Positions 18,461-62,255 of a stretch of 64,000 nucleotides of DNA are shown here, piece by piece. The first letter of the stretch is position 1. Each line of letters begins with the position of its first letter. Position numbers and translations under genes: made by a program. The stretch is from Octopus sinensis (Eukaryota). The stretch lies in contig NC_043001.1 of assembly GCF_006345805.1 (NCBI RefSeq), positions 37,758,001 to 37,822,000 of the forward strand, read 5' to 3'. The notes under the pieces were generated by a model. It saw only the letters and a list, made by a program, of their open reading frames with translations, did not search any database and was not told the DNA's origin.

Positions 18461-18754
18461 ATGTCTGGAAAATTTGTAACAGTGAACTACGAAGTTTTTG
18501 GCAAAGTTCAAGGTGTATTTTTCCGCAAATGTACTCAAATTAAAGCGAAAGAGTTGAATGTAGTCGGCTGGGTAATGAATACTAACCAGAAGACTGTGAA
18601 AGGCGTCATTCAGGGTTCCAGAGAGCAAATCAGCCCCATGAAAAAGTGGTTATCAGAAGAAGGAAGTCCTTCTTCATCTATCGAAAAATGTGAATTTTCC
18701 AAAGAAGTTTTTATCCCAACCTTAAAATTCAAAAAATTTGAAATAATACGCTAA
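18461..18754 (+). CDS. ACYP: acylphosphatase, 97 aa, no intron in CDS
   Basis: VFGKVQGVFFR (catalytic Arg loop) and GWVMN (catalytic Asn) signatures, full-length fold, ATG to TAA; CpG-rich upstream region with GTGACGCA. Confidence 0.95.
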   Translation: MSGKFVTVNYEVFGKVQGVFFRKCTQIKAKELNVVGWVMNTNQKTVKGVIQGSREQISPMKKWLSEEGSPSSSIEKCEFSKEVFIPTLKFKKFEIIR

Positions 18755-41453: not shown

Positions 41454-41520
41454 ATGTCTATATTACAAGTCACAAAAATTAGTTGCCTTTTACTGATTGG
41501 AATCCTTCCATATACATACG
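41454..41520 (+). CDS. MAM-mucin gene exon 1: signal peptide
   Basis: MSILQVTKISCLLLIGILPYTY(G); donor ACG|GTAAGA, phase 1. Confidence 0.8.
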
Positions 41521-41594
41521 GTAAGACATTAATAGATTTATTTTCATGTAACAAATATGTCATATTAGTCTGTTTGATATCTATATACCTAGAG

Positions 41595-41795
41595 CAGTGG
41601 TTTTCAACCAGAGTTCCGCCAGTACAGTCCAGGGGTTCCGCAAGAAGTTACAAAACTGCTAAAATCGGCAGTAATTTTTAATTATCCTGTGCAGATATGT
41701 GTGCATAAGACTATTAAATTATTGCACAGGGGTTCCTCGAGCCAGTGGAATGTTTCCTTGGGGTTCCGCTCCAGCAAAAAGTTTGAAAAGCACTG
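41595..41795. mobile_element. hAT (Charlie-type) MITE in intron 1
   Basis: CAGTGGTTTTCAA / TTGAAAAGCACTG TIRs and perfect 8-bp TSD ACCTAGAG (41587-41594, 41796-41803). Confidence 0.9.
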
Positions 41796-42439
41796 ACCTA
41801 GAGTATAAGGTAAGGTAAAAAAAAAAAACAGCACAATTGTATGACAATGGTTCTGAAAGACCTCAGGTGTACACACACATGCACACACACACTCACACAC
41901 ACATGCACACACACTCACACATGTTCACACACACACATGCACACACACATGCACACACACACTCATACAGGCACACACACACACACTTTCTTGTATATAC
42001 ACTCACTTAAAATACATGAACATGCACATATTTGTGCACACATATTTTTGCACACATACCCACATGAACATATCCATAAATATGTACATGCATTTACATG
42101 TAAACGTTAGGTGACAAGCTGACAAAAATATTATCACACTGGACAAAATGCTCAGTGACATTTCTTATGACTTCACATTTTGAGTTCAAATGTTGCCGGG
42201 TTGACTTTACTATTTATTATTTTGGGGTCAATAAAATAAGTACCAGTTAGGTACTGGGGTTGATGAAATCGACTTCACTACCCCTCAAAATTGCTGGCTT
42301 CATGCCAAAATAAAAGAATTTTTATATGTACACATATATATAAGAGTGTGCTAATTACTATTAGCACTATTTCATCCTGGTCTTGTGAAAGATTTTCTAC
42401 CCACGTGTTAGTCTCATGTCGTACATCTACACATCTTTG

Positions 42440-45400
42440 TATCTCAGGAAAAGGTGACCTTTACTTTACACCCAAATGCCAGTTCACCAGAGACCACATG
42501 TTTTGGAATATGACCATCATCCAAACAACAAACATCTTCAACTTATCAAAATTGTTATTGGAGTGGGAAAAGCAAACATGGAGAATGTGCCTACCCTAGA
42601 AATCCCTTCCTGCCAGCAAATCTCAAGGATTCTGCAAGAACACCTCATATGGAACACATGAAAATTGTTGTTTTTGTGAAAAATGTGTTGTCCACAATTC
42701 ACTGCAATAAATGATTGTACAAAGAACACAATCCTGACAAATGTATTTCTTAGCAAATAATCTCTGATGTTATTCTGCTATACTTTCCAAGTGAGTCTTG
42801 AGAGAGTAATAATTTCATTTCCAGTTGATTTCTTCCCAGTTTCCTTTCTCAGGCAATGTTATCTTTAGCAAAGGAGCCAAGGTATTGAAACTTATGAACT
42901 ACGTCCAGTTACTTACCTTTGATTATAATGCACAGAGGTGCTGGAGTACTTTGTCTCATAACATGGATCGTCTTGTGACTGATTGTAACTCCTAAAAATC
43001 TGTCCATAATACATTTTAGACTTCTGCAGAGATTAAAGATATAGCTTCAACATCAGCAAATGCCAAGTCTCTGATAATAACTTTTCTTATCCCAGTTTTG
43101 ACATTTAGTCTGGCTATATTGAAGATCCAGTCATCTTACTTATCAGATGAAGTCTTGAGTATTTGTTTTATGAGCAGCCTTACGAAGATACCATACTTAT
43201 TCAACACTACTTTTCCCTCCAAATTCACAAGACATTGATCCATCATAGTATACAGAGCTCAACATTCCATTATGGAAAGACCTTATGATAAATTATTGGG
43301 TCATCCCATAAATAATGCAGTTTTTTTTATACTTTTACTTTTCAAAATTAAGATAAAGTTTTTTAATTTAAAATATACTCTCTTTCATTTTCTACATTAC
43401 TCTTCCATCTGTCTGGTAGACATGCAATGCCCCTCTTCCAAAATTCACTTGTCCATGATGAAAACTACTCCTCCAGTACTGTTCTGACCTTGTCTAAAGA
43501 ATTAATATTTTTTCTGTCCAAAGGATTTTGAAGACTGGAATAAATGATAATCAGATGGGGTAGTATCCAACGAATATGATGAATGGGGTATCATTTCCCA
43601 TTCAAACTACTCCAACCTTTGCAATGTCATTCTCACTGTATGTAACTGAACATTAGCCTGATGAAAGAACACCTTTTGTTTTCAAACCAAAGATGGTTGT
43701 TTTTCTTCTAGTACTGATGTTGATAAATGGTTGAATGACCAAATTCAAGCTTCTCTGATAGTTCCTCAACAGTTACAGCAGGATTTTCTTCCACCAAGGT
43801 TTGCAGAATATCTTCATCAAACTCTACAGATCTTCCAGGACAAGGCTCATCTAGGCTGTAGTTTTCAGCTTGGAATTTCTGGAATTGACACTGGTTTATG
43901 CTTATTACCCAATCCCCAAATACTGCATTGATATTCTTTGCATTTTCCATTATGTTGTTGCCTTTATCGAACTCATAAAGCAAAATATGCCAAATATGCT
44001 CCTTTGTCACTTCCATTATAGCTTTGAAAAAATAACTGTTAAAACTGAACTGCACTCTTCAAAACTTGCACTAAGAATAAGTACAAGGTAAAATTACTAC
44101 TTGCTTTTATAGCAAGTTGATGAAGGTATTTTATCCCATCCCCCTCCAATCTTTAGTTCATGCAAATGAAAAACATGCATTATTTATGGGATGACCCAAT
44201 AGATTTGGTTTGCAATCAGTGAATGTTATCATCTTAAAAAGACCATTTTGAACAATGAAATCAAAAGCTTTGCTAGGTTAATGAAGGCTAAATATAATGG
44301 CTGATTATGTTCTCATTATTTTCTTGAACTTGATGCAATGAAAATACCATGTCTGTAGTTGATTACTTGGTATGTGATTGTGACTCAGGATATACTCTGT
44401 CAGCAAACCTTTGCCAACTAAAGCAAGAAGAAATATAACATAATAAATTATTGCAGTCACTACTGTTACATTTTGTTCTTATATTGTGCAACAATATTGG
44501 CATCTCGCATATCCTGAGGAACTGTGCCCTTTCCCAACATTGAATGAGAAGCTTTTGCAGAAGTACAAGGAAGATTGGCATGATGTTTTTAAAGACCTCT
44601 ATCGAAATACAATTTTTGTGGGGGACTCTGCCTGATGGCATCTGATCATGAAGTCCTTCTATTATAGAGAATTCATCTTGTTTGATCATACATGGGAAAC
44701 TTTGAATACCATCAAAGTTGATTGATCAACAAGTTTCTTTCTTCAATGATATTCAGTAAAGTTCCATCCATTTCTCTATCTATTCAGGTCTCTCTGTAAT
44801 TATTGTTATAGATTTGGGCTTTAACAGAGCAATTTATTACTGATTGAAGTATCTTTTTTCTTTTTACCAGAGTACACCTCCCTGATATTACTTGTGTCTC
44901 AGGTTTTTAGGAGGGAGTTGGAGAGGAGTCAATAGTTATTAATGCCTATTCAGACAGTTACTTGAATTCTGCTTCTAGTTGTCACAAGTGTTTGGTGATT
45001 CTTGTAGAAGGCAAGATTTTTGTAGGCCTGAAGAGTCTATAATTTGCAGCACTGAAGTCACATAACCTTTCTAAATAGAATGAATGCCAATTATTGTGCT
45101 GCAGGATTTTTCTCAGAAGATTCTATTGCAGCAATGTGAAAGATTGTTTTGCAGTTGTCCAAGGGCTGCATGGCATTTAATGTTCTACAGTTTCTCAAGA
45201 AGACTTATGAGACCAATGAGTTAAAGTGGACAGGCTTTCCTGGTTTTGTATCGTTTGTTACATTCAGGAATATCAACCCCTCTGTCTTTGGTGCAGACAA
45301 GTGAATAGTCTATATCACAAACTGCCTTGTTTTAAGTCCTGTTCATCCTATCTTAAGTAGCTTTAACTATTATCATTGACCTTGTCAATGTTGTAACAAT

Positions 45401-45900
45401 ATAAGCAAATAGGCAATCTTCTTTTTATTGCATCACCTCTGGCATTAAAGTAGTGAAAAATTATCAAGGTTCTTTTTCTAGGAAATGTTTGGTGTGACTG
45501 TCCAAGTTAACATCGAAGTCATCAACAACAGTAAGTCTAGTGTCATACATATAGAGAAGATGAAATCTTGTGAAGGAAAAGCATACACTCTGTATCTGAG
45601 CTAGTAAGGCTTAAAGAAGTGTATTCAAGACAGCAAACAAAACACTGTGTCCATGAGTTTCATATTCTCTCTTGCCTTACCAGAAAAATGAGTAGACAGC
45701 TTTTCTTAGGCTCCTAGATTCAGTCTGACGGATATCTTGAAGAGCAACAGTGCACATAAAGATCTGACAAGAAGATTCGAAAATAGATTTCCGATGTCAA
45801 TACAAATCCTTTGTACTGATTCTTTAACTTGAGCTAGTTGATGTTAAATAATCAATTTATCAGCATAGTTATATTATGATTTCTAATATAGGCATAGACC
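42440..45900 (-). mobile_element. RTE (BovB-like) LINE, degraded and interrupted by a mariner remnant
   Basis: LLIQCWE, SDCNN, RVYPESQ, IFNIARLNVKT...IRDLAFAD, FHMRCSCRILEICWQ. Confidence 0.8.
43330..44110 (-). mobile_element. internally deleted mariner element
   Basis: HILLYEFDKG...SLDEPCPGRS...LVEENP...EELSEKL (N-term) and YSLDTTPSDYHLF (YSPDLAPSDYHLF). Confidence 0.85.
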
Positions 45901-46203
45901 AAACATGTTGGGGCAACAGAACTTGAAAGATGAGAACTCTATTCTAAATGAAGGAATGTAAAATATTAGACTAAGTTACTTGTTTAATATGAAGTCTACA
46001 ATATAAAAATTTTAATTCACTTACTCAATTAAATCTATTGAGAAAGGTATGAGCATCACAGAATCTCATTTCCCCTTTCTATATTAAACCTAATACTTTG
46101 AGTCTATGTAAAAACAAAAATTGATATTAAAAATAAAGTAAAATTATTCCAGTACACAATACTTTCAGAAAGCTAATAGTGTTTATATTTTCATAATATA
46201 AAG

Positions 46204-46305
46204 GTTCCTGGGAATGCAGTTTCCGAAAGGGAAAGTGTCATTGGTCTACTAGAGATGAATATTGCTCCTGGAAATGGACAAACAAGCAACTTGATGGAGT
46301 TAAAG
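46204..46305 (+). CDS. MAM-mucin gene exon 2: MAM domain N-terminus
   Basis: AG|GT..AAAG|GTGAGA, phase 1-1; SWECSFRKGKCHWSTRDEYCSWKWTNKQLDGVK fits the MAM C-x-F-x3-C-x-W...W pattern. Confidence 0.85.
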
Positions 46306-46929
46306 GTGAGATTTTTTTCCCTTTTTTTCTCTGTAAGCTTGAGAAATATTAGTATTACAAAGTCTTATTTTTTCTTCATTTTCACACATCTTACTATTAA
46401 TATAACAGTTCAAACAAAAATGTCTGAGTAAATATGAAGGAATATTTACATATTTATTAATCCCCAAGAAATAGCAGCCAAATTATTCTTAAATCACACT
46501 CTGGAAGCTCAGACTATATAAAATCTGGTACATAAATAGATGAGTTGGTCATGGTTGGAATTCACAAGGAGATCAAACAGAACCCAGTACCTTCCCAATT
46601 GATTCATCAGTTATAAGTTTCTTCTGATACCTACATTTGTGAAATATATACCCTCATGTTAATGACTTGAAACCAGAATTGACTGTTGTTGAGGGTTAAG
46701 TGGTTTTACACAAAGCATGATATTGTCTCAGACAGTTACTAAATCTCATTAATATACATATACACAACAGAAATGATACTCTAGGTTTTGGAATTTTTTC
46801 TATCTTTGTCAAGAGGAAAGGATGGCAAAAAAACATTTGCAGACCCTCAGAGACCAGTTAGATCAATTTTTTTTTATTCTTTAATTTACATCACATCACT
46901 TGTAGACATTGATTCTAACTTGAAAACAA

Positions 46930-47340
46930 ATTTCCCTCCAGGCTTGTGAGATGACACGACACATGCCAACTCTGAGACAGTGCACAGTCATGAGACATTA
47001 AACAAATTTTCATTCAAATGTTAGATCAATAAAGTCTATGTTCAGCTTGAACATCTGTAAGCTGACATCTGCAAAAACAAGATATCTAGAGTGTTGATAT
47101 GTTGGGGATGAAGGATTGTGTAAAGGAGTTAGTGTGCAACAGTAGGGGTTAGAAGATGAGGAAAGACAGGTGTTTTGGTTTGACTTGGTGGAAGTGGTAT
47201 TAAGTAGCAAGGTTCATTGCAGTAGTGATAGAATAAGAAGAGAGAAGAGAGAATCATATTTCCAAGGCAGTACATTGGTGAATGAATCAATGCCAAAGCA
47301 CTGAGATGACTTTGTATTAGTTAAGACCTTGGGTGTTTGT
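46930..47340 (-). mobile_element. CR1/Jockey-like LINE fragment
   Basis: Degraded post-RT region (KSNQNTCLS...RYL); weak. Confidence 0.4.
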
Positions 47341-47507
47341 GTGCTTAGTAACAGCATCATGTATGACAAACAACCTCAGTGTATATATATATATATTTAT
47401 GTGAGTGTTTGTGTGTGTGTGTGTGTGCATGTGTGCATGTGTATCATTACTATAATATGAATTACTATCACAAACTCATACATGCATACACTACACACAG
47501 GCAGAGA

Positions 47508-47547
<40 letters not shown>

Positions 47548-47579
47548 AATGAGCAGTGAGCAGACAAACAAGAGAAGGA

Positions 47580-49080
47580 CACTCAACAGATTTATTGGGA
47601 GTTACATTACATGTATGGATCAAACAAGTTGATTCAAATTCCTTTAGTACTTCAAGTTTCAAGCGTGATGCTAATCTTCAGCCATTGGAATTAGAATAAG
47701 ATGTCGATGAAGGAGAGTCACTGTTTATTGGTGGGGGTCAGCCTGTGATTGGTCAAGAATATAAACTCATGTGGTTATGTACAAGGGGTAAGAGTATGCA
47801 GGCATGATGATGGGTGTTTCATCTCAGAAGTTACAGTGTCTCCAGAGAAAGTGCATTCTCTTTATCTTTGGATCTGAATGAGTATATGTGCTGGGAGTAC
47901 CTTACCTTAAAGTCAATAGCTGTCATGCCCGTATAGTGCCTAGTGATATCATCAGATGATATAAGGGTAGTTCTATACTACAGCCCTTGAGAGGCAAAAT
48001 CCTTCTAGAAAACAGGTGGTGAGGTTTCGGCAGTTGCAGGATAGGGTTGGGGTTTGTGTGGGCACATTATTGTGTCTGTTGATGCATGTGATATTAGATA
48101 CAATATTGTCTAAACAGGAGTAACTCACTTTGACATTGTGGTGCTGACGAATTTGTAATACTTATGACCTCTGGGGAAATGTTTCTTAATTAACGACAGG
48201 AAGCCCCTGGCTACGTTGGTGGAAACTACTAGGTTAAATGGGGTGGGGAGTTAAACAGATTAGTTTCCTCTTCCTAACTGTCTTGGTGTGAGGAGAGAGG
48301 ATTTGGAGATTGTCCACATATGTGAGCTTCTCAAAAAATCCCCTCCTAGACAAAGCATTGTTGTAGTGGGAAACAGTGCTATTAAAAGTCTCCTTGTTGG
48401 CCAATAGTTTTGATACCCATTTGCTAATACCTGAAAGCAGATTTCTAATTACAGCAGGAGGTGGGGAGTGGTTTGAGCTCTTGTGAATATATGCTGTTTC
48501 ATCATTAGGCTTCCTGTACAGGGTGTACTTACCCATGTTCAGGTCTAAGGTTACATCCAAGAAATCAGCCATAATCAGGTTGGTGGTAACTGTTATGGAC
48601 AGGCTGAACTCTTTGAATATTCATATTTAAGTCCTTCCTAAATGTATTCATGTCATGCTCGTTCATATGGCTTGAGATAGCCAGGCCATCATCCCTATAC
48701 AGAACCAACATATATGGGTGGGTACGTCTCTTGGGGGTGTCCAAAATGTATAACCTGATGAAACAGCCAGCACCAAGTGGACTGTTGTCTACAGGGCACC
48801 ACCATATTTCCCCAGCACTCCTAATTGCCAGCTCTGCCTCCATGAAACCTGCATATCATCTATCAACCTGCAGTCTCCATCAACAAAAACTACAATCTAT
48901 CCTATTTCTATCACCAAAAGGATGTCCTTCTGATAAATTTCAAACCACTGGCTGCTAACAACCCAGATATACCTCCTTAGTACCAGCTACTCCCCTGCAC
49001 CGCCTGTACCAACTAACTATATCAGCCCCATGAGCAGGACCGAAATCCTCAATCTCCAACGCTTCTCCATGCCTGTCTAA
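47580..49080 (-). mobile_element. Penelope-like element remnant (RT, thumb, Cys linker, GIY-YIG, pLTR)
   Basis: LYRDDGLA, FLDVTLDL...YRKPN...SNH, RKRKLI, NVKVSYSC, SCNCRN...C...GFCL...VV. Confidence 0.85.
47637..47692 (-). ncRNA. hammerhead-like fold at the Penelope 3' end (stem II decayed)
   Basis: AAUUCCAAUGG-CUGAAGA-uuAGC aucac GCUu-GAAA-CUUGAAGU-A-CUAAAGGAAUU; GUA cleavage triplet. Confidence 0.5.
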
Positions 49081-49534
49081 CTGCATACTCTCACCCCTTG
49101 TACAGAGCCAAACAAGTTTATATGCATGCATGCGCATGTGTGTGTATGTGAATGCATGTGTGCATCTGTAAATCATATGCATGCATACAGATGTATGCAC
49201 ACTAGTGTATATGTGCATATGCTCATGCATTTGCACTCATGCATGTCCCTTTGAGCAGGTGCATGTTCATGTGTGCTCATGTGCACTGATGTATGTGCAT
49301 GCATACTCATGTGTATGTGCACACATGTGCATATGCTTGTGTGCATCTGAGTAGATGCTTGCATGCACATGTGTATGTGCTTGAATGTATGTGTGTGTGT
49401 ATGTGTGTGTGTGTATGTGTGTGTGTGTGTGTGTTTGTGTGTGTGCGCATGTGTGTATATGTGTGTGTGTTGGTGTCATAAGTATTATTATCACCAAACT
49501 CATACATGCATACATACAGAGAAACAAACAGATA

Positions 49535-49568
<34 letters not shown>

Positions 49569-50383
49569 CACACACATATATATTGAAGATATACTTTTCT
49601 GGAAAGTGATTTCATCTGAGACAGTGAATTGAAATGTTAAAACTAAAACAATTACAGCATGGGGGAGATATATTAGACATTCAAAATGCACAGAGACTGT
49701 TAACTTCACTTAAACATATATTATTTGGTGGATGTCAAACATTTCATTTGGGACACGGTTGTTGTCAGTATATATAGTATATATCAGGGTTATAAATACA
49801 TTTTTAGTCATTCTGATTGTCATTGTTTGGCACTGGTAGTTGGTTCATTAAAACAGTATGTGTTTGTAATATACAAGGTTTCTCTTTCTTCTTCCTTTGG
49901 TATTGTATTGAACAGCAAGTCAGAAATGACAACAAACAAAAAAATGTATAAGTTTCTAACCACAGGTTGACACAAACTCTACAAAATCAGGTTGGGGAGC
50001 AAGTATACTTGTGGATGGAAATCTTGCTATTTTACACATGTTTAATTTACTGAAAACAGAAAAATAAGATGCACTTAAATCTTTATGATAAAATTTTATG
50101 TAAAAAATGTAATAGTTATACAATCTCCCAACTTTGCATGTTTTTAAAGATATGATTTTCTAATTAATGATATTATAATTTCAAGATTTCACATAATGAG
50201 ATGTTGATTGTATCAGGGGTAATGGATAAATACATGTATTCATATGTTGTAAATTAGTACATTAAGTCATGATCTGAAGTATTTTTATAAAAATTTGTTT
50301 GTCTTCATGTAAGTATTTGCTTATCTGTCTCTTCATCTATATATTGGCCTATCTGGCTATCCATCTTGCATTGTTTTACCTAG

Positions 50384-50628
50384 GTTATATGGTTTCCACT
50401 GGACAAAGCAGATGTACATCACAAATGAAATGGAAAGCGGCTACTTGGGGAGAAGCTGGGAAGCCTTTTTCCTTCTTATATCAAATAAATGGAAATGGTA
50501 AAGTTAACTTAACAGTAATTTGTTTTGAATATGGTCTCCTTGGGGATACTCCTCATAAAAAATGGACTTGTAATGCATCTCCAGCACATAGATGGACAAA
50601 GGCTCACATAAACTGCCCTTATAATTTG
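50384..50628 (+). CDS. MAM-mucin gene exon 3: MAM domain core
   Basis: CCTAG|GT...TTG|GTAAGA, phase 1-0; GYMVSTG...FSFLYQINGNGKVNLTV...W.CN...HRWTKAHINCPYNL. Confidence 0.85.
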
Positions 50629-50985
50629 GTAAGAATTCCTTATTGTCAAAATTCTTTTGCTAATATCATTTCTCTCTCTCTCTCTCTCTCTTTCACATAG
50701 ATGCACACATGGATACATTAATTCACACACACATACACATAAACACACACACACATGGACACACGAGGTTACACAGACATAAAATGGACACATGAATACA
50801 GACACACATGCATGTGCAAATGCAGTAAACGCAGACACATGGACATGCATGCAGACACACACATAAATACATACAGACACACAAGCACATGCTCATTAAC
50901 ATACACACATGGACACATACACATGTACACACACATGTGGACATACACATGTGGTATACACACATACACACACACGTGCACACAC

Positions 50986-51018
<33 letters not shown>

Positions 51019-52089
51019 ACACACACACACACAAAACCAATTCTATTGCTGTTCTTGCCTGAAAAATGGTAGGATGATTTCGTTTGGGAAAACCAATGCA
51101 CTTTATCAAGTGATGGGAGCTTTGCCTCATCTCCTTATACTAAGGACAGTCATAATGTGAACTAAGCTGTAATTCAACAAGGTTTGCTACGAAATGTATG
51201 ATGGGAGTGATAAGAAGAAAATACACATACGTCTGTTTTTATAAACTACCACAGTTCATTAGGCCAGAGCTTACATTTGGTTTCTGAGGTATTAAGTAGA
51301 TGACAGTTAAAAAAAACTAGCTTTGAAAACGATATCTCATTTTGTGGGTAACACTTCCCATAGAAACTTATCACACAAATTCATGCTGTGCCCACTAGGC
51401 AATTTGAAGCACAGCTACAGCTAATAATCCTTTGGAAATAGGAAGTTTCAGCCAATGAAAGTGACATGATATTCTGTTAAATCAAATACCTAATTGCATA
51501 CTAAATGGAATTCACAAAAAATTCGTTAAAAATTTATATTTATGCCTTATTTTGACAGAAAAAATATTTAGAAAGTAGTTTTTATTAGCCAGGACAGTGA
51601 GAGTAATAGGCATGTTTCTATCTTATAGAACTTCATCAGCAGAGCTTTGTCAGAACAAAATTTACTTGATCAATTGACAATAGATTTATACATGGATAAA
51701 ATATTTTTAAAAAATAGCAGAAGAAGCATCCCCAGCAATATCTGTTGTAATATCAAAAATTTTCAGATGCAGCACAAATTTTATTCAGTGAAAAGGACAC
51801 TGCTTTGAACAATGAAAATTTTGACTCCACATTACAAATAAATGTTTAAGTGAAGTTATTGGTCTTGTATGATTCTAAATGGCTAATTTATGTCTTCTGC
51901 ATTGCAATCACATTAATTTGCCTCGTATCAAATAAAACTGAATCAACAGATCTGACTATTATTTTCAAATGGATTAAAATAAGCAAAGGGGCAATATTCT
52001 GGTAGCAGGACATGAGTTGCCAGAATCTTGACTAGTTTTTCAATACTCTACCAACTCAGCCAGAAAATAAGAACAATAATTATTTTCAC

Positions 52090-53500
52090 AGAGTCTGGTG
52101 GGTAATTTTACTTGCCACCAGCACGAGGACCAGTCAGGTGGTACTGGCAATGGCCACACTCAAATGGTGTTTTTTACATGCCACGTGCACAGGGGCCAGT
52201 CCAGTGGCACTGGCAATGACCTCGCGCGAATATTTTTTCACATGCCACTGGCATTTTTATGTGCCACCAGCACTGAAGCCAGTCAGCTTTCTGGCAATGA
52301 TCACGCTCAGATGGTGCTCTTAGTGCTCCACTGGCATGGGTGTCAGTCATCGACTTTGATTTCGATTTCGATTTCACTTGCCTCAACAGGTCTTCACAAG
52401 TAAAGTTTAGTGTCCAATGAAGGAAAGGTATGCATAAGTGGGCTGGTTACACCCCTGACATAGGCCATGGGTTATGGTCTCACTTGGCTTGCCGGGTCTT
52501 CTCATGCACAGTATATTTCCAAAGGTCTCGGTCACTAGTCATTGCCTCTTATGTGTCCATAGCTTACACTGGGTACATCTTATAGTGTTTCTACCTACAC
52601 CTTTTCTACAGATCGAGCAGGGCCATCTACCTGAAGGGATTTGTTATTTGACAGCCTTCCTACTGATTAGGACTTTGGGTTTAGCTAGGTTGACTCTAAG
52701 GCCCTTTGTTTCTAATCATTGCTTCCACACCTGAAACTTCTCCTCTAGTTCTCATAGTGACTCAGCAATTAGAGCAAGGTCGTCAGCATACAGAAGCTCC
52801 CAGGGGCATCTTGTCTTGAATTCCTCTGTTATTGCCTGGATGACTATGATAAATAGGAGGGGGCTGAGGACTGAACTTTGGTGGACCCCTCCTTCTATCC
52901 AGAATTCTTCACTGTACTCATTGCCAACCCTCATCTTACTGACAGCATCTCTGTACATGGCTTGCACAGCTCTCACTAACCATTCATCTATCCCTAGTTT
53001 TGTCATTGACCAACACATAAGGGATTGGGGGACCCTGTCAAAGGTTTTCTCCATGTCAATAAAGCCAGGTACAGAGGTTTATCTTTGGCTAGGTATTTCT
53101 CTTGCGGCGAGCTAGCAGAAAGTTAGATTGCCGGGCGAAATGCGTAGCCGTATTTCGCCTGTCGATACGTTCCGAGTTCAAATTCCGCCGAGATAGACTT
53201 TGCCTTTCATCCTTTCGGGGTCAAATAAAGTACCAGTTACGCACTGGGGTCGATGTAGTTGACTTAATCCCTTTGTCTGTTATTGTTTGTCCCCTCTGTG
53301 TTTAGCCCCTTGTGGGTAGTAAAGAAATAGGTATTTCTCCTGCAGCTGTCTTACCAGAAATATAGCATCAGTGGTGCTTTTCCCTGGCATGGACCCAAAT
53401 TTCATCTCATCTAAACTGACTCTCTCCCTAATTAGTTGGGTTATGACCCTCTCTGTGACCTTCATTATCTGATCCAACAACTTGATACCTCTGTAATTGT
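52090..53500 (-). mobile_element. RTE LINE copy (RT to 3'UTR, internal deletion), interrupted by a SINE
   Basis: STTDAIFLVRQLQEKYL / MEKTFDRVP...GVHQSSVLSP...LLYADDL / RWPCSICRK. Confidence 0.85.
53106..53327 (+). mobile_element. full-length SINE with 16-bp TSD
   Basis: TSD TAGGTATTTCTC(T/C)TGC at 53090-53105 and 53328-53343. Confidence 0.9.
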
Positions 53501-53529
53501 TTGTATCTAAAGTGTCACCTTTATCTTTG

Positions 53530-54945
53530 TAAAGTCAACCTAGCTAAAACCAAAGTCCTAATAAGTTGGAAGGCTGTCAATTCACAAATCCCATCAGGTA
53601 GATGGCCCTGCTCGATCTGTAGAAAAGGCATAGGTAGAAACTCTGTAAGATGTACCCAGTGTAAGCTATGGACACATAAGAGGTGCAGCAATATTAAAGG
53701 AAGGCTAACTGGGAAGATAGATTTTGTATGTGGCAGATACTCAGAAGCAATAAACACTGAAAATATGCAGGGAACAACTTCCGCTACATTCCAGGGAGAA
53801 AAACTGTAAGTAGTTGATAGCTTCCATTATCTAGGTGACCAAGTCAGTAGCAGGGGTGGATGTGCTGAAAGTGTAGCTGCTAGAATAAGATTAGCCTGGG
53901 CAAAGTTCAGAGAGCTCTTAGCTCTGCTGGTGACAAACAGCCATGCTACATGGCAGTGAAACATGAGCCGTGACTGCTGAGGACATGCGGAAGCTTGTAA
54001 GGATTGAAGCCAGTATGCTCCACTGGATGTGTAATGTCAGATGCATACTCGACAGAGTGTAAGTACCTTGAGAGAAAAGTTGGACCTAAGAAGCATTAAA
54101 TGTGGTGTGCGAGAGAGACAACTGTGCTGGAATGGTCATGTGGTTAGAATGGATGAGGATAGCTGTGTGAAAAGGTGCAACACCCTAGCAGTTGAGGGAA
54201 CCTGTGGAACAGGTAGACCCAGGATGACCTGGGATGAGGTGGTGAAGCACGACTTTCAAACATTAGGCCTCACCAAGGCACTGACTAGTGACTAAGGCCT
54301 TTGGAAATACACTGTGTTTGAGAAGACCTGGCAAGCCAAGTGAGACCATAATCCGTGGCCTATGTCAGTGGTGTAATCAGCCCACTTATGTGTACCTTTC
54401 CTTCATTAGACGCTAAACTCTGCTTGCGAAGACCTGTTGAGGCAAGTGAAATCGAAATCGAAATCAAATTCAATGACAGTACCGCATGACTGGCATCTGT
54501 GCTAGTGGAGTGCTAAGAGCACCATCCAGGCGTGATCATTGCCAGAGTAGCTGACTGGCTTCCATGCCAGTGACACATAAAAAGCACCATTCGAGTGTGA
54601 TCATTACCAGCATCGCCTCATTGGCACTTGTGCCGGTGGCACATGAAAAAATATTTAAGCGAAGTCATTGCCAGTGCTGCTGGACTGGCTCCTATGCAGG
54701 TGGCATGTAAAAAGCACCATTTGAGCATGGCTGTTGCCAGTACCACCTGACTGGCCCTCGTGCCAGTGGCACGTAAAGGCACCCACTACACTCTCGGAGT
54801 GGTTGGCATTAGGAAGGGCATCCAGCTGTAGAAGCTCTGCCAGACTAGATTGGAGCCTGGTGCAACCATCTGGTTCACCAGTCCTCAGTCAAATCATCCA
54901 ACCCATGCCAGCATGGAAAGCGGACGTTACGCGATGATGATGATT
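53530..54945 (+). mobile_element. RTE LINE 3' portion with full 3'UTR and (GAT)n tail
   Basis: VNLAKTKVL...RWPCSICRKGIGRNSVRCTQCKLWTHKRC, FHYLGDQV, GRPRMTW. Confidence 0.85.
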
Positions 54946-55481
54946 ACATAGTACATCAAATGATATAACCAGACTGGGATATAATTGTACCACCCTACCT
55001 TATAACTGGATAGGTGTATACCATCTAACTGGTCTGCCCTGTAACTGGTTTGCCATATAACTAGTCAACCGTATATCTGTTCTGCCATAAAGCTTGTCAG
55101 CTTAAATTCTAACTTTACAAAAAAACACAGAAACAGTTGCTTCCCTGAACAAACTGCTTTAAGTTATAACTTAGTCTGACACCCATAACACTTCTACTAT
55201 ACCATATCAACTTGATACAATAAATTCCTTGGAATCACGAGACTCAGTTTTGGAAATAACTTCTTCATTGATCTTTGATCTAGTACTTAGAATACCTGGA
55301 TAATTTTCTGAACAAGCAACAGCAACACAACTACAAAATTCTCTACTACATGTTTAATTATAATTAATAAACATTAACCATACAAATAAAGAAAATGATT
55401 CTTGAAGCATCCATTCCTGCTACTGAAGGATTATGTTATTTTGAAAGTTTTCAATCTCATTCTATTTTTATTCTGTTTTAG

Positions 55482-55548
55482 GATAAAATCATTATTGAAG
55501 CTGAGTTTCATGGCAAATCAAATGTCATGATTGGAAAAATATGGAATG
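55482..55548 (+). CDS. MAM-mucin gene exon 4: MAM domain C-terminal strands
   Basis: Long pyrimidine tract TTTTAG|GAT...AATG|GTAAGT, phase 0-1; DKIIIEAEFHGKSNVMIGKIWN. Confidence 0.85.
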
Positions 55549-58030: not shown

Positions 58031-58289
58031 GTATGGCAAGGAGTCAAATCCTGCTGCCACACATATTGCATCTATTTATCTTTGAAATGCCTGTATCCTT
58101 GATCTTTTATCTCTTACTTGTTTCAATCATTGTTTCAAACTGTGGCCATGCTGGGGCACTGCCTAGAAGGGTTTTAGTTCAACTAATCAACCTTAGGACT
58201 AATTTTTTAAAACCTAGTGCTTATTCTATCAGTATTGTTGTGATTTTAGTTTTGATCACGTGATTTTGATTGTCTCTTTTGCTGTTATA

Positions 58290-59554: not shown

Positions 59555-60019
59555 AATAAAGTATACAGTATACAGAGCAGCTCAAGTCTTTTTGAATTTA
59601 ATTAATTATACTAAATCAAACATATATTCATTAAGCTTTGTCCAATGTGTTTGGTTACACACTGCTTCCATAGTTAAAATCTCATGTTGCTTGCATGAAG
59701 TATACCATGTACGTTTCCATTTTCTCAAATATAATGCAAAGTACATCACTAACTTTTTAATGTTTAAATCTCAATGCCATCAAGTCACTGGAAACGTGTT
59801 TGGATGTGACAATTACAGCATTTATTCATACATAGCATGTACTCAAATGTAATGGGAATTGACTTTGCAGATGTTCTTTATTTCCTTGTAGTTGGGATAA
59901 AATTAATGAAAAAATTGCATATTTGAAATGTATGTACATTCTTACACAGACACACATTCACTCACTCATATATTGCACACACATATTTAAATATGAATGT
60001 GTGTGTGTGCGTGTGTGTG
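59555..60019. repeat. direct duplication, copy 1 (copy 2 at 61182-61667)
   Basis: About 470 bp of non-repetitive-looking sequence repeated 1627 bp downstream with scattered substitutions. Confidence 0.9.
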
Positions 60020-60357
60020 AAAACCTTGAGATCCCACTTACTACGATTTTTTATTAGTGGTTGGTGGTTGTATGGTTGTAGTTGGTGCAGGTGTGACGGT
60101 GGTTGTTGGTGTAGTTGTAGTTGTTGGTGTGGTTGTTGGTATTACAGTTTTTTTTACAGACTGCATGAGACTGTTACTCTTATCTTACAGAGACATCCAC
60201 CACTATGTATAGTTCTGGAGCCCACAGGTGAAATCCACCTTCTAAGAGAGAAAATTGTAAGAGATTATGACTATAACAAATATGATGATGTAAGGAATAG
60301 AGATTATTTCTGTTTCCATTCATGCCATTAAATTTAATTTTAATTCTTTCTTTTCAG

Positions 60358-60923
60358 AAAATGGGCCCCAAACAGAAAATTCTTGTCCACCAGTTCCACC
60401 CACAACCACACAAGCACCAACTACCATCACTCTACCAACAACTACAACCACACCAACAACTACAACCAAACCAACAACAACAATGCTAATGACACCAACC
60501 ATCAAAAGAACCCTTTCACCAAGGACATCAACAAAAGGTATAAACCTCCCAAGTTCAATAATGAGTACAACAATGGAATATCATTCAAGCAAAACTATAT
60601 CAAAATTATTTACAACTTTCCATCCTGGTAAAGATATTTCAACAGTTTCAATATTGGACATTATAAAGAACAGTACAAAGATGTTTAATACCAATACTCC
60701 TTCGCACAAAACATCTATAGCATCTACAACTAACAATATACTACCAACAACTTTATTTCATCATAACACAAATGGATATAAACAGAATGAGACAACACTT
60801 GAAGCAAATCAAGTTACCAAACCAAGCAAAGGTTTTACTGTTTACACCTCAGGAAGGGATAATGTCACATCTTATTTTACCACTGAGAGTAGCAGTAACA
60901 AATTTGATGAACTGAAAAGCTAG
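60358..60923 (+). CDS. MAM-mucin gene exon 5: last MAM Cys and Thr/Ser/Pro mucin stalk, ending at TAG (spliced product ~348 aa)
   Basis: TTCTTTCTTTTCAG|AA phase 1 matches exon 4; ENGPQTENSCPPVPPTTTQAPTT...SSNKFDELKS*. Confidence 0.85.
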
Positions 60924-61049
60924 CTTCGCAAGAAAATAATAATTATTCTTGCATCCATTTTTGGCATTCTAAGTGTTTTAGCAATTATCTACTTGATTGT
61001 GCGGAGCATACGGAGATCAGATTTGCTAAATGAAAGGAGATTGGTGTAA
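60924..61049 (+). CDS. in-frame post-stop extension: 22-aa transmembrane helix plus basic cytoplasmic tail (41 aa)
   Basis: LRKK-IIIILASIFGILSVLAIIYLIV-RSIRRSDLLNERRLV*; AATAAA at 61142 and 61182; translated only if the UAG is bypassed. Confidence 0.6.
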   Translation, partial: LRKKIIIILASIFGILSVLAIIYLIVRSIRRSDLLNERRLV

Positions 61050-61181
61050 CCGGTTTTGATCGTAGATAGACCTGCTTAATAGATCCTGCATTTAATTTTG
61101 TCAGCCAACACATACATACACTCACACTCATGTAGTGAGTCAATAAACTATTGGTATGCTAAATAAGCAATAGAAATTTAC

Positions 61182-61626
61182 AATAAAGTATACAGTAATC
61201 AGAGCAGCACTAATCTTTTTGAAATTAACTGATTATACTAAATCAAAAATATATTCATTAAGATTTGTCCAATGTGTTTGGTTACACACTGCTTCCATAG
61301 TTAAAATCTTGTGTTGCTTGCATGAAGTATACCATGAACGTTTCCATTTTCTCAAATATAATGCAAAGTACATCACTAATTTTTTAATGTTCAAATCTCA
61401 ATGCCATCAAGTCACTGGAAACGTGTTTGGATGTGACAATTACTGCATTTATTCATCCATAGCATGTACTCAAATGTAATGTGAATTGACTTTGTGGATG
61501 TTCTTTATTTCCTTGTAGTTGGAATAAAATTAATGAAAAAAATTGCATATTTGAAATGTATGTACATTCTTACACAGACACACACTCACTCACCCATATA
61601 TTGCACACACATATATCAACATATGA

Positions 61627-61666
<40 letters not shown>

Positions 61667-61667: not shown

Positions 61668-61874
61668 CTTAGAGCTTTGGTAAGCTGAACAACAGCAATT
61701 TGTTTTCTTCTACTACAAAATCTCTTATGGTGACAACATGCCCTGTAATTTATTCACAAAATCATTTTTCATACCAAAGTAAGGCTAAGTAACATGTAAC
61801 CTTTACTCTCTCTCGCTTTCCTTTTTCTTTCATTTTTTTGTGTGTGATATTTTACTCTTTTTTACTCTTTTACT

Positions 61875-62255
61875 TGTTTCAGCCATTTGACTGTGACCAT
61901 GCTGGAGCACCACCTTTAGTCGAGCAAGTCGACCTCAGTACTTATTTTTTGTAAGCCTTGTACTTATTCTATTGGTCTCTTTCGCCAAACCGCTAAGTTA
62001 CGGGGACGTAAACACACCAGCATCAGTTGTCAAGTGATGTTGTGGGGACAAACACAGACACAAAAACACACACATATACATATATATATGCATATATATG
62101 ACGGGCTTCTTTCAGTTTCCGTCTACCAAATCCACTCACAAGGCTTTGGTTGGCCTGAGGCTATAGCAGAAGACACTTGCCCAAGGTGCCACGCAGTGGG
62201 ACTGAACCCGGAGCCATGTGGTTTGTAAGCAAGCTACTTACCACACAGCCACTCA
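61875..62255 (-). mobile_element. tRNA-derived SINE, near full length
   Basis: Minus-strand head GTGGCTGTGTGGTAAG...CCGGGTTCAGTCCC (boxes A and B). Confidence 0.8.

What the first reader, a model, noticed from the sequence alone, without database searches (positions are those of the whole stretch)
60921..61049. A single UAG separates the mucin ectodomain from an intact transmembrane anchor: possible stop-codon switch between secreted and membrane forms
After ...FDELKS-TAG the frame stays open for 41 codons, encoding LRKK, a 22-residue hydrophobic helix and a positive-inside tail (RSIRR...), ending at TAA before two AATAAA signals. This is the missing end of a type I membrane protein. The stop is in the last exon, so NMD would not remove the transcript. 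No in-frame splice bypass is visible. Options: (1) A-to-I editing UAG to UIG (Trp), as at the hepatitis delta amber/W site; UAG is the preferred ADAR triplet and coleoid cephalopods recode extensively; (2) translational readthrough (UAG followed by C, inside the 10-nt palindrome AAGCUAGCUU); (3) a recent nonsense allele or a consensus error. Options 1 and 2 would be a regulated secreted-versus-tethered system.
Basis: partly seen in the sequence, partly recalled or inferred. Interest (0 to 1): 0.85.

Follow-up and report, generated by a model that had tools for sequence, protein, structure and literature searches.

The report
Recent nonsense mutation, not stop-codon switch
The TAG before the membrane anchor is real in this Octopus sinensis sequence, but the sister species and every paralog carry a sense codon there, so it looks like an ordinary recent truncating mutation or a base-call error, not a regulated secreted/membrane switch.

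Summary
The window is Octopus sinensis CM016863.1:37758001-37822000. The finding lies in the last exon of LOC115212404, which encodes a signal peptide, a beta-sandwich domain, a Thr-rich stalk, a TM helix and a short tail.

The sequence is as described. TAG is at 60921-60923, followed by 41 open codons (LRKK, a 22-residue hydrophobic helix, RSIRR...). TAA is at 61047-61049 and two AATAAA signals follow.

The stop is not conserved. The O. vulgaris positional ortholog, about 96% identical over 19 kb, reads TAT (Tyr) and has an intact 389-aa ORF through the anchor. Three further paralogous copies read TAT and a fourth reads AAT.

There is no long RNA duplex around the site (z = -1.3), no known readthrough motif, and no credible canonical splice bypass.

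RefSeq already annotates the truncated form (X1, 348 aa). Its isoform X2 skips 453 nt across a junction that is not GT-AG. That exact junction exists as DNA in a second, short copy of the exon in O. vulgaris, so X2 is probably a mapping artefact of transcripts from such a copy.

Best reading: a recent nonsense allele that yields a secreted protein. Editing or readthrough is not excluded, but nothing found here supports it.

The parts
41454..41520 (+). Exon 1 of LOC115212404: start codon and signal peptide (MSILQVTKISCLLLIGILPYTY-)
   Evidence: Exact match to P0002/P0006 and a GT donor
46204..46305 (+). Exon 2: start of the Cys/Trp-rich beta-sandwich domain
   Evidence: AG/GT splice sites
50384..50628 (+). 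Exon 3: core of the beta-sandwich domain
   Evidence: the model shows an all-beta domain over residues 33-160
55482..55548 (+). Exon 4 (DKIIIEAEFHGKSNVMIGKIWN), ends in phase 1
60358..60920 (+). Last exon, coding part of RefSeq isoform X1: Thr/Pro-rich mucin-like stalk ending FDELKS
   Evidence: P0006, 348 aa
60921..60923 (+). Derived amber codon TAG. Homologous copies read TAT (O. vulgaris A and A', B in both species) or AAT (C). The change is T to G at 60923.
60924..61046 (+). Stranded coding sequence: LRKK, TM helix (60936-61001), cytoplasmic tail (61002-61046). No differences from the O. vulgaris ortholog over 123 nt.
   Evidence: helix 202-238 in the X2 model
61047..61049 (+). Ancestral stop codon TAA. 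It ends the CDS of RefSeq X2 and of the O. vulgaris gene model.
61142..61187 (+). Two AATAAA polyadenylation signals (61142-61147 and 61182-61187)
60489..60941 (+). 453-nt segment skipped in RefSeq isoform X2. Its borders are not GT-AG and share a TAAT microhomology. The same deletion junction exists as DNA in the short exon copy of O. vulgaris and is absent from this window.
60057..60143 (+). Intronic inverted copy of the PTTT-coding repeat (partner 60397-60482). It forms a long intron-exon duplex about 440 nt upstream of the TAG.

Best explanation
LOC115212404 of Octopus sinensis descends from a type I membrane protein: signal peptide, jelly-roll beta-sandwich domain, O-glycosylatable Thr/Pro stalk, one TM helix and a short basic tail. 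In the lineage, or only in the individual, behind this assembly, one transversion at window 60923 turned Tyr349 (TAT) into an amber codon (TAG). Translation therefore ends at FDELKS and the product is secreted rather than anchored. The mRNA is not expected to be removed by NMD, because the stop lies in the last exon. The change is recent, so the 41 downstream codons are still intact. It is not a conserved, programmed recoding site.

Shown: the sequence, the gene model, the sense codon in the ortholog and paralogs, and the absence of duplex, motif or canonical splice bypass.

Inferred: that the truncated protein is made and secreted, and that the allele is real rather than a consensus error.
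For: 1. The window matches O. sinensis CM016863.1 exactly. RefSeq isoform X1 (P0006, 348 aa) ends at this TAG.
2. The O. vulgaris positional ortholog reads TAT at the homologous codon. It is 96.4% identical over 19.4 kb, lies in the same position upstream of paralog B, and has an intact 389-aa ORF with GT-AG splice sites running through the TM to the same TAA. The O. vulgaris annotated protein P0008 reads FDELKSYLRKK...RRLV.
3. Codon table: A of O. sinensis TAG; A of O. vulgaris TAT; A' of O. vulgaris TAT; B of O. sinensis TAT; B of O. vulgaris TAT; C of O. vulgaris AAT. Parsimony gives TAT to TAG on the O. sinensis branch, which split about 2.5 My ago (PMC10700109).
4. There are no differences in the 123 post-stop nt between the species, against 12 in the 692-nt exon overall. 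This fits a young stop.
5. Loss of the anchor exon is common in this tandem family. B carries shared stops and a frameshift in both species. A' has two frameshifts. C has a frameshift in the PTTT array. The stalk evolves nearly neutrally (pN/pS 0.82).
6. No signature of recoding was found. The local fold has z = -1.3 and the UAG sits in a 3-bp stem. The downstream context is CUUCGC. No credible canonical bypass exists.
Against: - No reads were available, so a consensus error or a heterozygous site cannot be told apart from a fixed change.
- Zero substitutions in the post-stop 123 nt is slightly fewer than the roughly 2.6 expected at the intron mismatch rate (P about 0.07). This is also what continued translation of the anchor would produce.
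- UAG is a good ADAR triplet, and stop-loss UAG-to-UGG events are known in cephalopod transcriptomes (PMC8382921).
- RefSeq X2 shows that some transcript evidence joins the short stalk to the TM.
Confidence: 0.78

Rival explanations
1. Assembly or consensus error. The animal really has TAT (or another sense codon), and the G at 60923 is a miscall in the PacBio-based ASM634580v1 assembly.
For: - It is a single-base difference from a 97-98% identical ortholog.
- The downstream ORF is perfectly intact.
- The assembly is from PacBio reads and is more fragmented than the O. vulgaris one.
Against: - Long-read consensus errors are mostly indels, not transversions (general knowledge).
- Real substitutions between the two species are about 2% per site here, far more frequent than residual miscalls.
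- Other copies of the family carry real-looking disabling changes shared by both species.
Confidence: 0.08
2. Regulated recoding at the TAG. ADAR editing of UAG to UIG (Trp), or translational readthrough, restores the TM-anchored form in a fraction of molecules, giving secreted and tethered forms from one mRNA.
For: - UAG is a favoured ADAR triplet (general knowledge), and cephalopod stop-loss editing is on record.
- The base after the stop is C.
- The downstream ORF is intact and identical to the ortholog.
- A weak AU-rich hairpin (GCAAGAA/UUCUUGC) starts a few nt after the stop.
Against: - The stop is absent from the ortholog and from all five other homologous copies, so it cannot be a conserved switch.
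- There is no extended duplex around the site (z = -1.3).
- There is no CARYYA or CUAG type readthrough context.
- The hairpin is equally present in O. vulgaris, where there is no stop.
- The 10-nt palindrome was created by the mutation itself, since O. vulgaris has AAGCTATCTT.
Confidence: 0.06
3. The membrane form is supplied by an alternative short terminal exon. As in O. vulgaris, a second, shortened copy of the last exon (short stalk joined directly to the TM) lies just downstream and is missing or collapsed in the O. sinensis assembly. The long exon (now with TAG) gives the secreted form and the short exon gives the anchored form. This is compatible with the best explanation for the TAG itself.
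For: - O. vulgaris carries this copy at L003 3413-3633 (also seen in L005). It has exactly the RefSeq X2 junction ATGCTA|ATTATT in DNA, an upstream CACAG acceptor in the right phase, and the same TM and TAA.
- RefSeq X2 (P0002) needs a 453-nt 'intron' without GT-AG in O. sinensis. That is what transcripts from such a copy would look like when mapped to an assembly lacking it.
- O. vulgaris RNA data are routinely mapped to the O. sinensis genome.
Against: - The short copy is not in the window.
- In O. vulgaris it is identical to the long copy in all shared parts and carries O. vulgaris-specific variants. It may therefore be a young, vulgaris-only duplication, or even a haplotype misassembled in tandem.
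- Use of its acceptor is untested.
- X2 evidence may come from O. vulgaris RNA, or from reverse-transcriptase template switching at the TAAT microhomology.
Confidence: 0.2

Closest known systems
Lineage-specific premature termination codon in a last exon (NMD-insensitive truncating variant)
   Same: A single-base nonsense change relative to the ortholog and paralogs. It lies in the terminal exon. The downstream ORF has not yet decayed. The product lacks its C-terminal anchor.
   Different: Nothing essential differs. The population frequency in O. sinensis is unknown.
ADAR stop-loss recoding (hepatitis delta virus amber/W site; cephalopod UAG-to-UGG events, PMC8382921)
   Same: A UAG triplet with an open, meaningful downstream frame.
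   Different: No duplex was found around the site. The stop is not conserved. No RNA evidence is available.
Programmed stop-codon readthrough (tobamovirus-type UAG-CARYYA; metazoan UGA-CUAG extensions)
   Same: A stop followed by C and an in-frame functional extension.
   Different: The context is CUUCGC, not CARYYA or CUAG. The stop is not conserved across species. No stop-specific downstream structure was found.
Secreted versus membrane isoforms through alternative 3' terminal exons (immunoglobulin mu-s/mu-m type)
   Same: In O. vulgaris, two tandem versions of the terminal exon could give different C-termini. In O. sinensis, the long exon now ends before the TM.
   Different: Both O. vulgaris versions keep the TM. 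Usage of the short copy is not shown, and it is absent from the O. sinensis assembly.
MAM / CBM-like jelly-roll ectodomain proteins on mucin stalks
   Same: The N-terminal domain is an all-beta sandwich. UniRef names the O. bimaculoides homolog 'MAM domain-containing protein'. The MAM domain of neuropilin-1 is among the fold hits.
   Different: No Pfam MAM hit at E<=0.1. The model is of low confidence (pLDDT 57) and its best fold hits are bacterial CBMs with TM-scores below 0.5.

Membership tests
Programmed stop-codon readthrough | The stop codon and the downstream ORF are both conserved in orthologs | tested here: not met
   O. vulgaris ortholog TAT; copies A' and B TAT; copy C AAT
Programmed stop-codon readthrough | Readthrough-promoting 3' context (UAG-CARYYA, UGA-CUAG) or a stop-specific downstream structure | tested here: not met
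   The context is UAG-CUUCGC. The only structure is a weak AU-rich hairpin, which O. vulgaris also has without a stop.
Programmed stop-codon readthrough | Ribosome footprints or peptides beyond the stop | not testable with these tools
   No Ribo-seq or proteomics access
ADAR stop-loss (amber/W) editing site | Target A in a favourable triplet (UAG) | tested here: met
   UAG at 60921-60923
ADAR stop-loss (amber/W) editing site | Target A embedded in an extended RNA duplex | tested here: not met
   201-nt fold z = -1.30, with the UAG in a 3-bp stem. The strong intron-exon duplex (z = -5.6) ends about 440 nt upstream.
ADAR stop-loss (amber/W) editing site | A in DNA, G in RNA | not testable with these tools
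   No reads. Look-ups of window ORFs in read-derived assemblies found nothing.
Lineage-specific nonsense variant | Sense codon in the ortholog and paralogs, one base away from the stop | tested here: met
   TAT versus TAG
Lineage-specific nonsense variant | The ortholog has an otherwise intact full-length ORF | tested here: met
   389-aa ORF with GT-AG splice sites in L005
Lineage-specific nonsense variant | Variant confirmed in raw reads or in other individuals | not testable with these tools
   No read access
Alternative 3' terminal exon system | Two terminal exons present in the genome | tested here: not met
   The window holds one copy. O. vulgaris has the long and short copies.
MAM domain family (PF00629) | Significant match to the family profile | tested here: not met
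   No Pfam family at E<=0.1 for P0006 or P0004
MAM domain family (PF00629) | MAM-like jelly-roll fold | tested here: inconclusive
   The model is an all-beta sandwich with pLDDT 57. Neuropilin-1 MAM ranks 18th at E = 3e-4 and target-normalised TM 0.44, among many CBMs.

The most novel reading that the evidence does not exclude
The amber codon is a newborn switch, less than about 2.5 My old. It is fixed in O. sinensis, and partial ADAR editing (UAG to UIG, Trp replacing the ancestral Tyr) or leaky readthrough at UAG-C keeps the anchored form alongside a new secreted form. That would explain why the 41 downstream codons show no change. It would be a rare view of a stop-codon recoding site at its origin, in a clade known for heavy recoding.
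Probability: 0.05. Interest if true: 0.6.

Novelty: already known. Interest (0 to 1): 0.15.

Why it matters
As it stands, this matters little. It is one truncating substitution, or a miscall, in an uncharacterised and fast-evolving tandem gene family. RefSeq already ends isoform X1 at this codon.

It has three modest uses:
- It is a caution for scans. An intact ORF after a stop is what any young nonsense mutation looks like, and one ortholog comparison settles the question.
- It gives a probable explanation for a RefSeq isoform whose 'intron' lacks GT-AG borders. The same junction exists as DNA in the sister species.
- It documents a small octopus gene cluster whose recognition-type domain evolves with pN/pS of about 2 and whose copies repeatedly lose their membrane anchor.

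If reads showed the TAG to be fixed and edited, it would become an example of a recoding site caught at birth.

Tried and rejected
- Canonical splice bypass of the TAG. There is one AG acceptor (ending 60932) with no pyrimidine tract, and only weak in-frame donors. Rejected.
- The 99-nt AG/GT-flanked ORF at 60191-60289 (RHPPLC...) as a coding cassette exon. Exon 4 ends in phase 1, so including it gives an early stop (my reading). RefSeq does not use it. Rejected.
- L001 (O. vulgaris P0005+P0001) as the ortholog. It is only 82-93% identical and lies about 40-60 kb further along the array, so it is paralog C.
- Independent read-derived evidence. Exact look-ups of the 146-aa TAG-terminated ORF and of the exon-3 ORF found nothing, as did look-ups of P0002 and P0004. 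The look-up of P0006 returned only the NCBI reference contig.
- Literature on the locus names: none found.
- Pfam on the protein: no family.
- Wider homolog searches. Only Octopus sinensis, O. vulgaris and O. bimaculoides proteins turned up, so no more distant outgroup was available for the codon.
- The third word-index protein search was left unused because it would have repeated.

Full report
**Where the window comes from.** The last 6716 bases of the window are identical to the start of locus L002, which is Octopus sinensis CM016863.1 from position 37815285. The window is therefore CM016863.1:37758001-37822000 in assembly GCA_006345805.1, made from PacBio reads plus Hi-C (reference list seen). 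GC content is about 35% and the window is full of transposon fragments.

- The last exon starts at 60358 after a ttttcag acceptor.
- It encodes ENGPQTENSCPPVPP, then a Thr/Pro-rich stalk, ending ...FDELKS.
- TAG is at 60921-60923.
- The frame then stays open for 41 codons: LRKK, IIIILASIFGILSVLAIIYLIV and RSIRRSDLLNERRLV.
- TAA is at 61047-61049.
- The hydrophobic stretch reaches a Kyte-Doolittle 19-residue mean of 2.88.
- AATAAA occurs at 61142 and 61182.
- An open run of 40 or more codons is not itself unusual here: 10.5% of inter-stop runs reach it. Homology, described below, shows the stretch is real coding sequence by descent.

**The gene.** A protein search with the stalk and TM returned two hits: O. 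sinensis LOC115212404 isoform X2 (P0002, 239 aa) and an O. vulgaris hypothetical protein (P0001).
- P0002 maps to the window at 100% identity.
- The GT-AG exons are 41454-41520, 46204-46305, 50384-50628, 55482-55548 and 60358 onward.
- Its cluster mate, isoform X1 (P0006, 348 aa), ends exactly at FDELKS. The truncated reading is therefore already the RefSeq annotation.
- The protein has a signal peptide, an all-beta domain, the stalk and the helix. In the AlphaFold model of X2, the strands span residues 33-160 and the helix spans 202-238, at mean pLDDT 57.
- Pfam finds no family.
- Foldseek gives only generic jelly-roll matches: CBM16, CBM61, CBM29 and the neuropilin-1 MAM domain, all with TM-scores below 0.5.
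- UniRef calls the O. bimaculoides homolog a MAM domain protein.

**The decisive comparison.** Gene positions show a tandem array. In O. sinensis the order is A (this gene), then B (LOC115212323) 6.2 kb downstream. In O. vulgaris the order is A', A, B, then C further on.
- O. vulgaris copy A is collinear with the window over 19.4 kb at 96.4% identity and sits in the same place upstream of B.
- Its last exon differs from the window's at 12 of 692 positions. One of these is the codon in question, which is TAT (Tyr) in O. vulgaris.
- Joining its five exons at GT-AG sites gives an uninterrupted 389-aa ORF through the TM to the same TAA.
- The O. vulgaris annotated product P0008 reads ...FDELKSYLRKKIIIILASIFGILSVLAIIYLIVRSIRRSDLLNERRLV.

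The other homologous copies also carry a sense codon:

| Copy | Species | Codon |
|---|---|---|
| A | O. sinensis (window) | TAG |
| A | O. vulgaris | TAT |
| A' | O. vulgaris | TAT |
| B | O. sinensis | TAT |
| B | O. vulgaris | TAT |
| C | O. vulgaris | AAT |

The TAG is therefore a derived T-to-G transversion at window 60923, on the O. sinensis side of a split dated to about 2.5 My (PMC10700109).

**Signatures of recoding.** None was found.
- A 201-nt fold centred on the TAG is unremarkable (z = -1.30). The UAG sits in a 3-bp stem.
- The 10-nt palindrome AAGCTAGCTT was created by the mutation itself, since O. vulgaris has AAGCTATCTT.
- The 3' context CUUCGC matches neither of the readthrough motifs I know of, CARYYA or CUAG.
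- The weak hairpin just downstream is also present in O. vulgaris, where there is no stop.
- Stop-loss UAG-to-UGG editing does occur in cephalopod transcriptomes (PMC8382921). The mechanism is therefore possible in principle, but nothing here points to it.

**Age and constraint.** Between the two species:

| Region | pN/pS | Differences |
|---|---|---|
| Stalk | 0.82 | 8 nonsynonymous, 3 synonymous |
| Domain exons 1-4 | 2.1 | 34.8 nonsynonymous, 4.2 synonymous |
| 123 post-stop nt | n/a | none |

At the intron mismatch rate of about 2.1%, roughly 2.6 changes would be expected after the stop, so zero has a probability of about 0.07. That fits a young stop and does not require continued translation.

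Decay of this exon is common in the family:
- B has stops and a frameshift shared by both species.
- A' has two frameshifts.
- C has a frameshift in its expanded PTTT array.

**The RefSeq X2 'bypass'.** X2 joins 60488 to 60942 and so skips 453 nt (151 codons). No register of the junction gives GT-AG, GC-AG or AT-AC; it has a TAAT microhomology.
- O. vulgaris has a second, short copy of the exon directly downstream of the long exon (L003 3413-3633). It contains exactly this junction in DNA (ATGCTA|ATTATT).
- It is preceded by a 39-nt inverted piece of the 3' UTR and a CACAG acceptor in the right phase.
- It is identical to the long copy in all shared parts (0 of 113 and 0 of 166 nt) and carries O. 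vulgaris-specific variants.
- The junction is absent from the window.

The simplest reading is a DNA-level, template-switch type rearrangement. Transcripts from such a copy, when mapped to the O. sinensis assembly, would then produce the apparent 453-nt intron that lacks canonical splice sites. Those transcripts may well be O. vulgaris RNA, which is routinely mapped to this assembly. Whether O. sinensis has the short copy is open.

**Verdict.** The sequence observation is correct. The 'missing end of a type I membrane protein' reading is also correct. The regulated-switch reading is not supported. The best explanation is a recent nonsense allele that makes the product secreted (confidence about 0.78). 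A consensus error (about 0.08) and functional editing or readthrough (about 0.06) are the minor alternatives. The alternative short terminal exon (about 0.2) is compatible with the main explanation.

Noticed in passing
window 60057-60143 and 60397-60482: Intron 4 holds an inverted copy of the PTTT-coding repeat found at the start of the last exon. The arms are 45-48 nt long and 81-87% complementary. The 471-nt fold has z = -5.6 with 0 of 100 shuffles as stable. The repeat is present in gene A of both O. sinensis and O. vulgaris (92% over 48 nt there) and absent from paralogs B and C. It is an intron-exon duplex of the kind ADAR uses, and would target Thr codons of the stalk.
   Followed up: partly
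L003 3360-3760 (also L005 about 46040-46300), O. vulgaris: A short second copy of the terminal exon lies directly after the long one. It lacks the 453-nt stalk segment at a TAAT microhomology and is preceded by a 39-nt inverted 3' UTR piece. It has the exact junction of O. sinensis RefSeq isoform X2 and is absent from the O. sinensis window.
   Followed up: yes
window 41454-55548 versus L005 26470-40436: The domain-coding exons 1-4 differ more between the two species than the introns do (exons 2-3 about 8-9%, against about 3.6% over the 19.4-kb alignment). pN/pS is 2.1. O. vulgaris exon 3 resembles paralog C. This points to diversifying selection, gene conversion among tandem copies, or both.
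   Followed up: partly
L005 1-14142, O. vulgaris: An extra tandem copy (A') lies upstream of the ortholog and has no counterpart in the 41 kb of the window upstream of exon 1. Its last exon has two frameshifts. The O. vulgaris annotated 348-aa protein (P0008) is a chimera of A' and A exons.
   Followed up: partly
L002 33250-34300 and L003 34380-35450: Paralog B (LOC115212323, annotated as 191 aa) has a recognisable stalk/TM exon just beyond its annotated end. The exon is disabled by stops (MH*SF, and ACI*AII inside the TM) and a frameshift, all shared by O. sinensis and O. vulgaris.
   Followed up: yes
window 59555-60019 and 61182-61647: A direct repeat of about 465 nt (90-94% identical, each copy ending in a (TG)n run) flanks the terminal exon on both sides. 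It is also present in O. vulgaris.
   Followed up: no
window 18461-18754 (+): An uninterrupted 97-aa acylphosphatase ORF (Pfam PF00708, E = 6.5e-22). It could be an intronless gene or a retrocopy.
   Followed up: partly
window 43711-44055 (-), 52755-53054 (-), 53501-53806 (+): Transposon-derived ORF fragments: a Mos1-type HTH, a reverse transcriptase and a PHD/C1 finger. Octopus SINE-like copies are also scattered around the gene, for example at 58100-58230 and 61850-62250.
   Followed up: no
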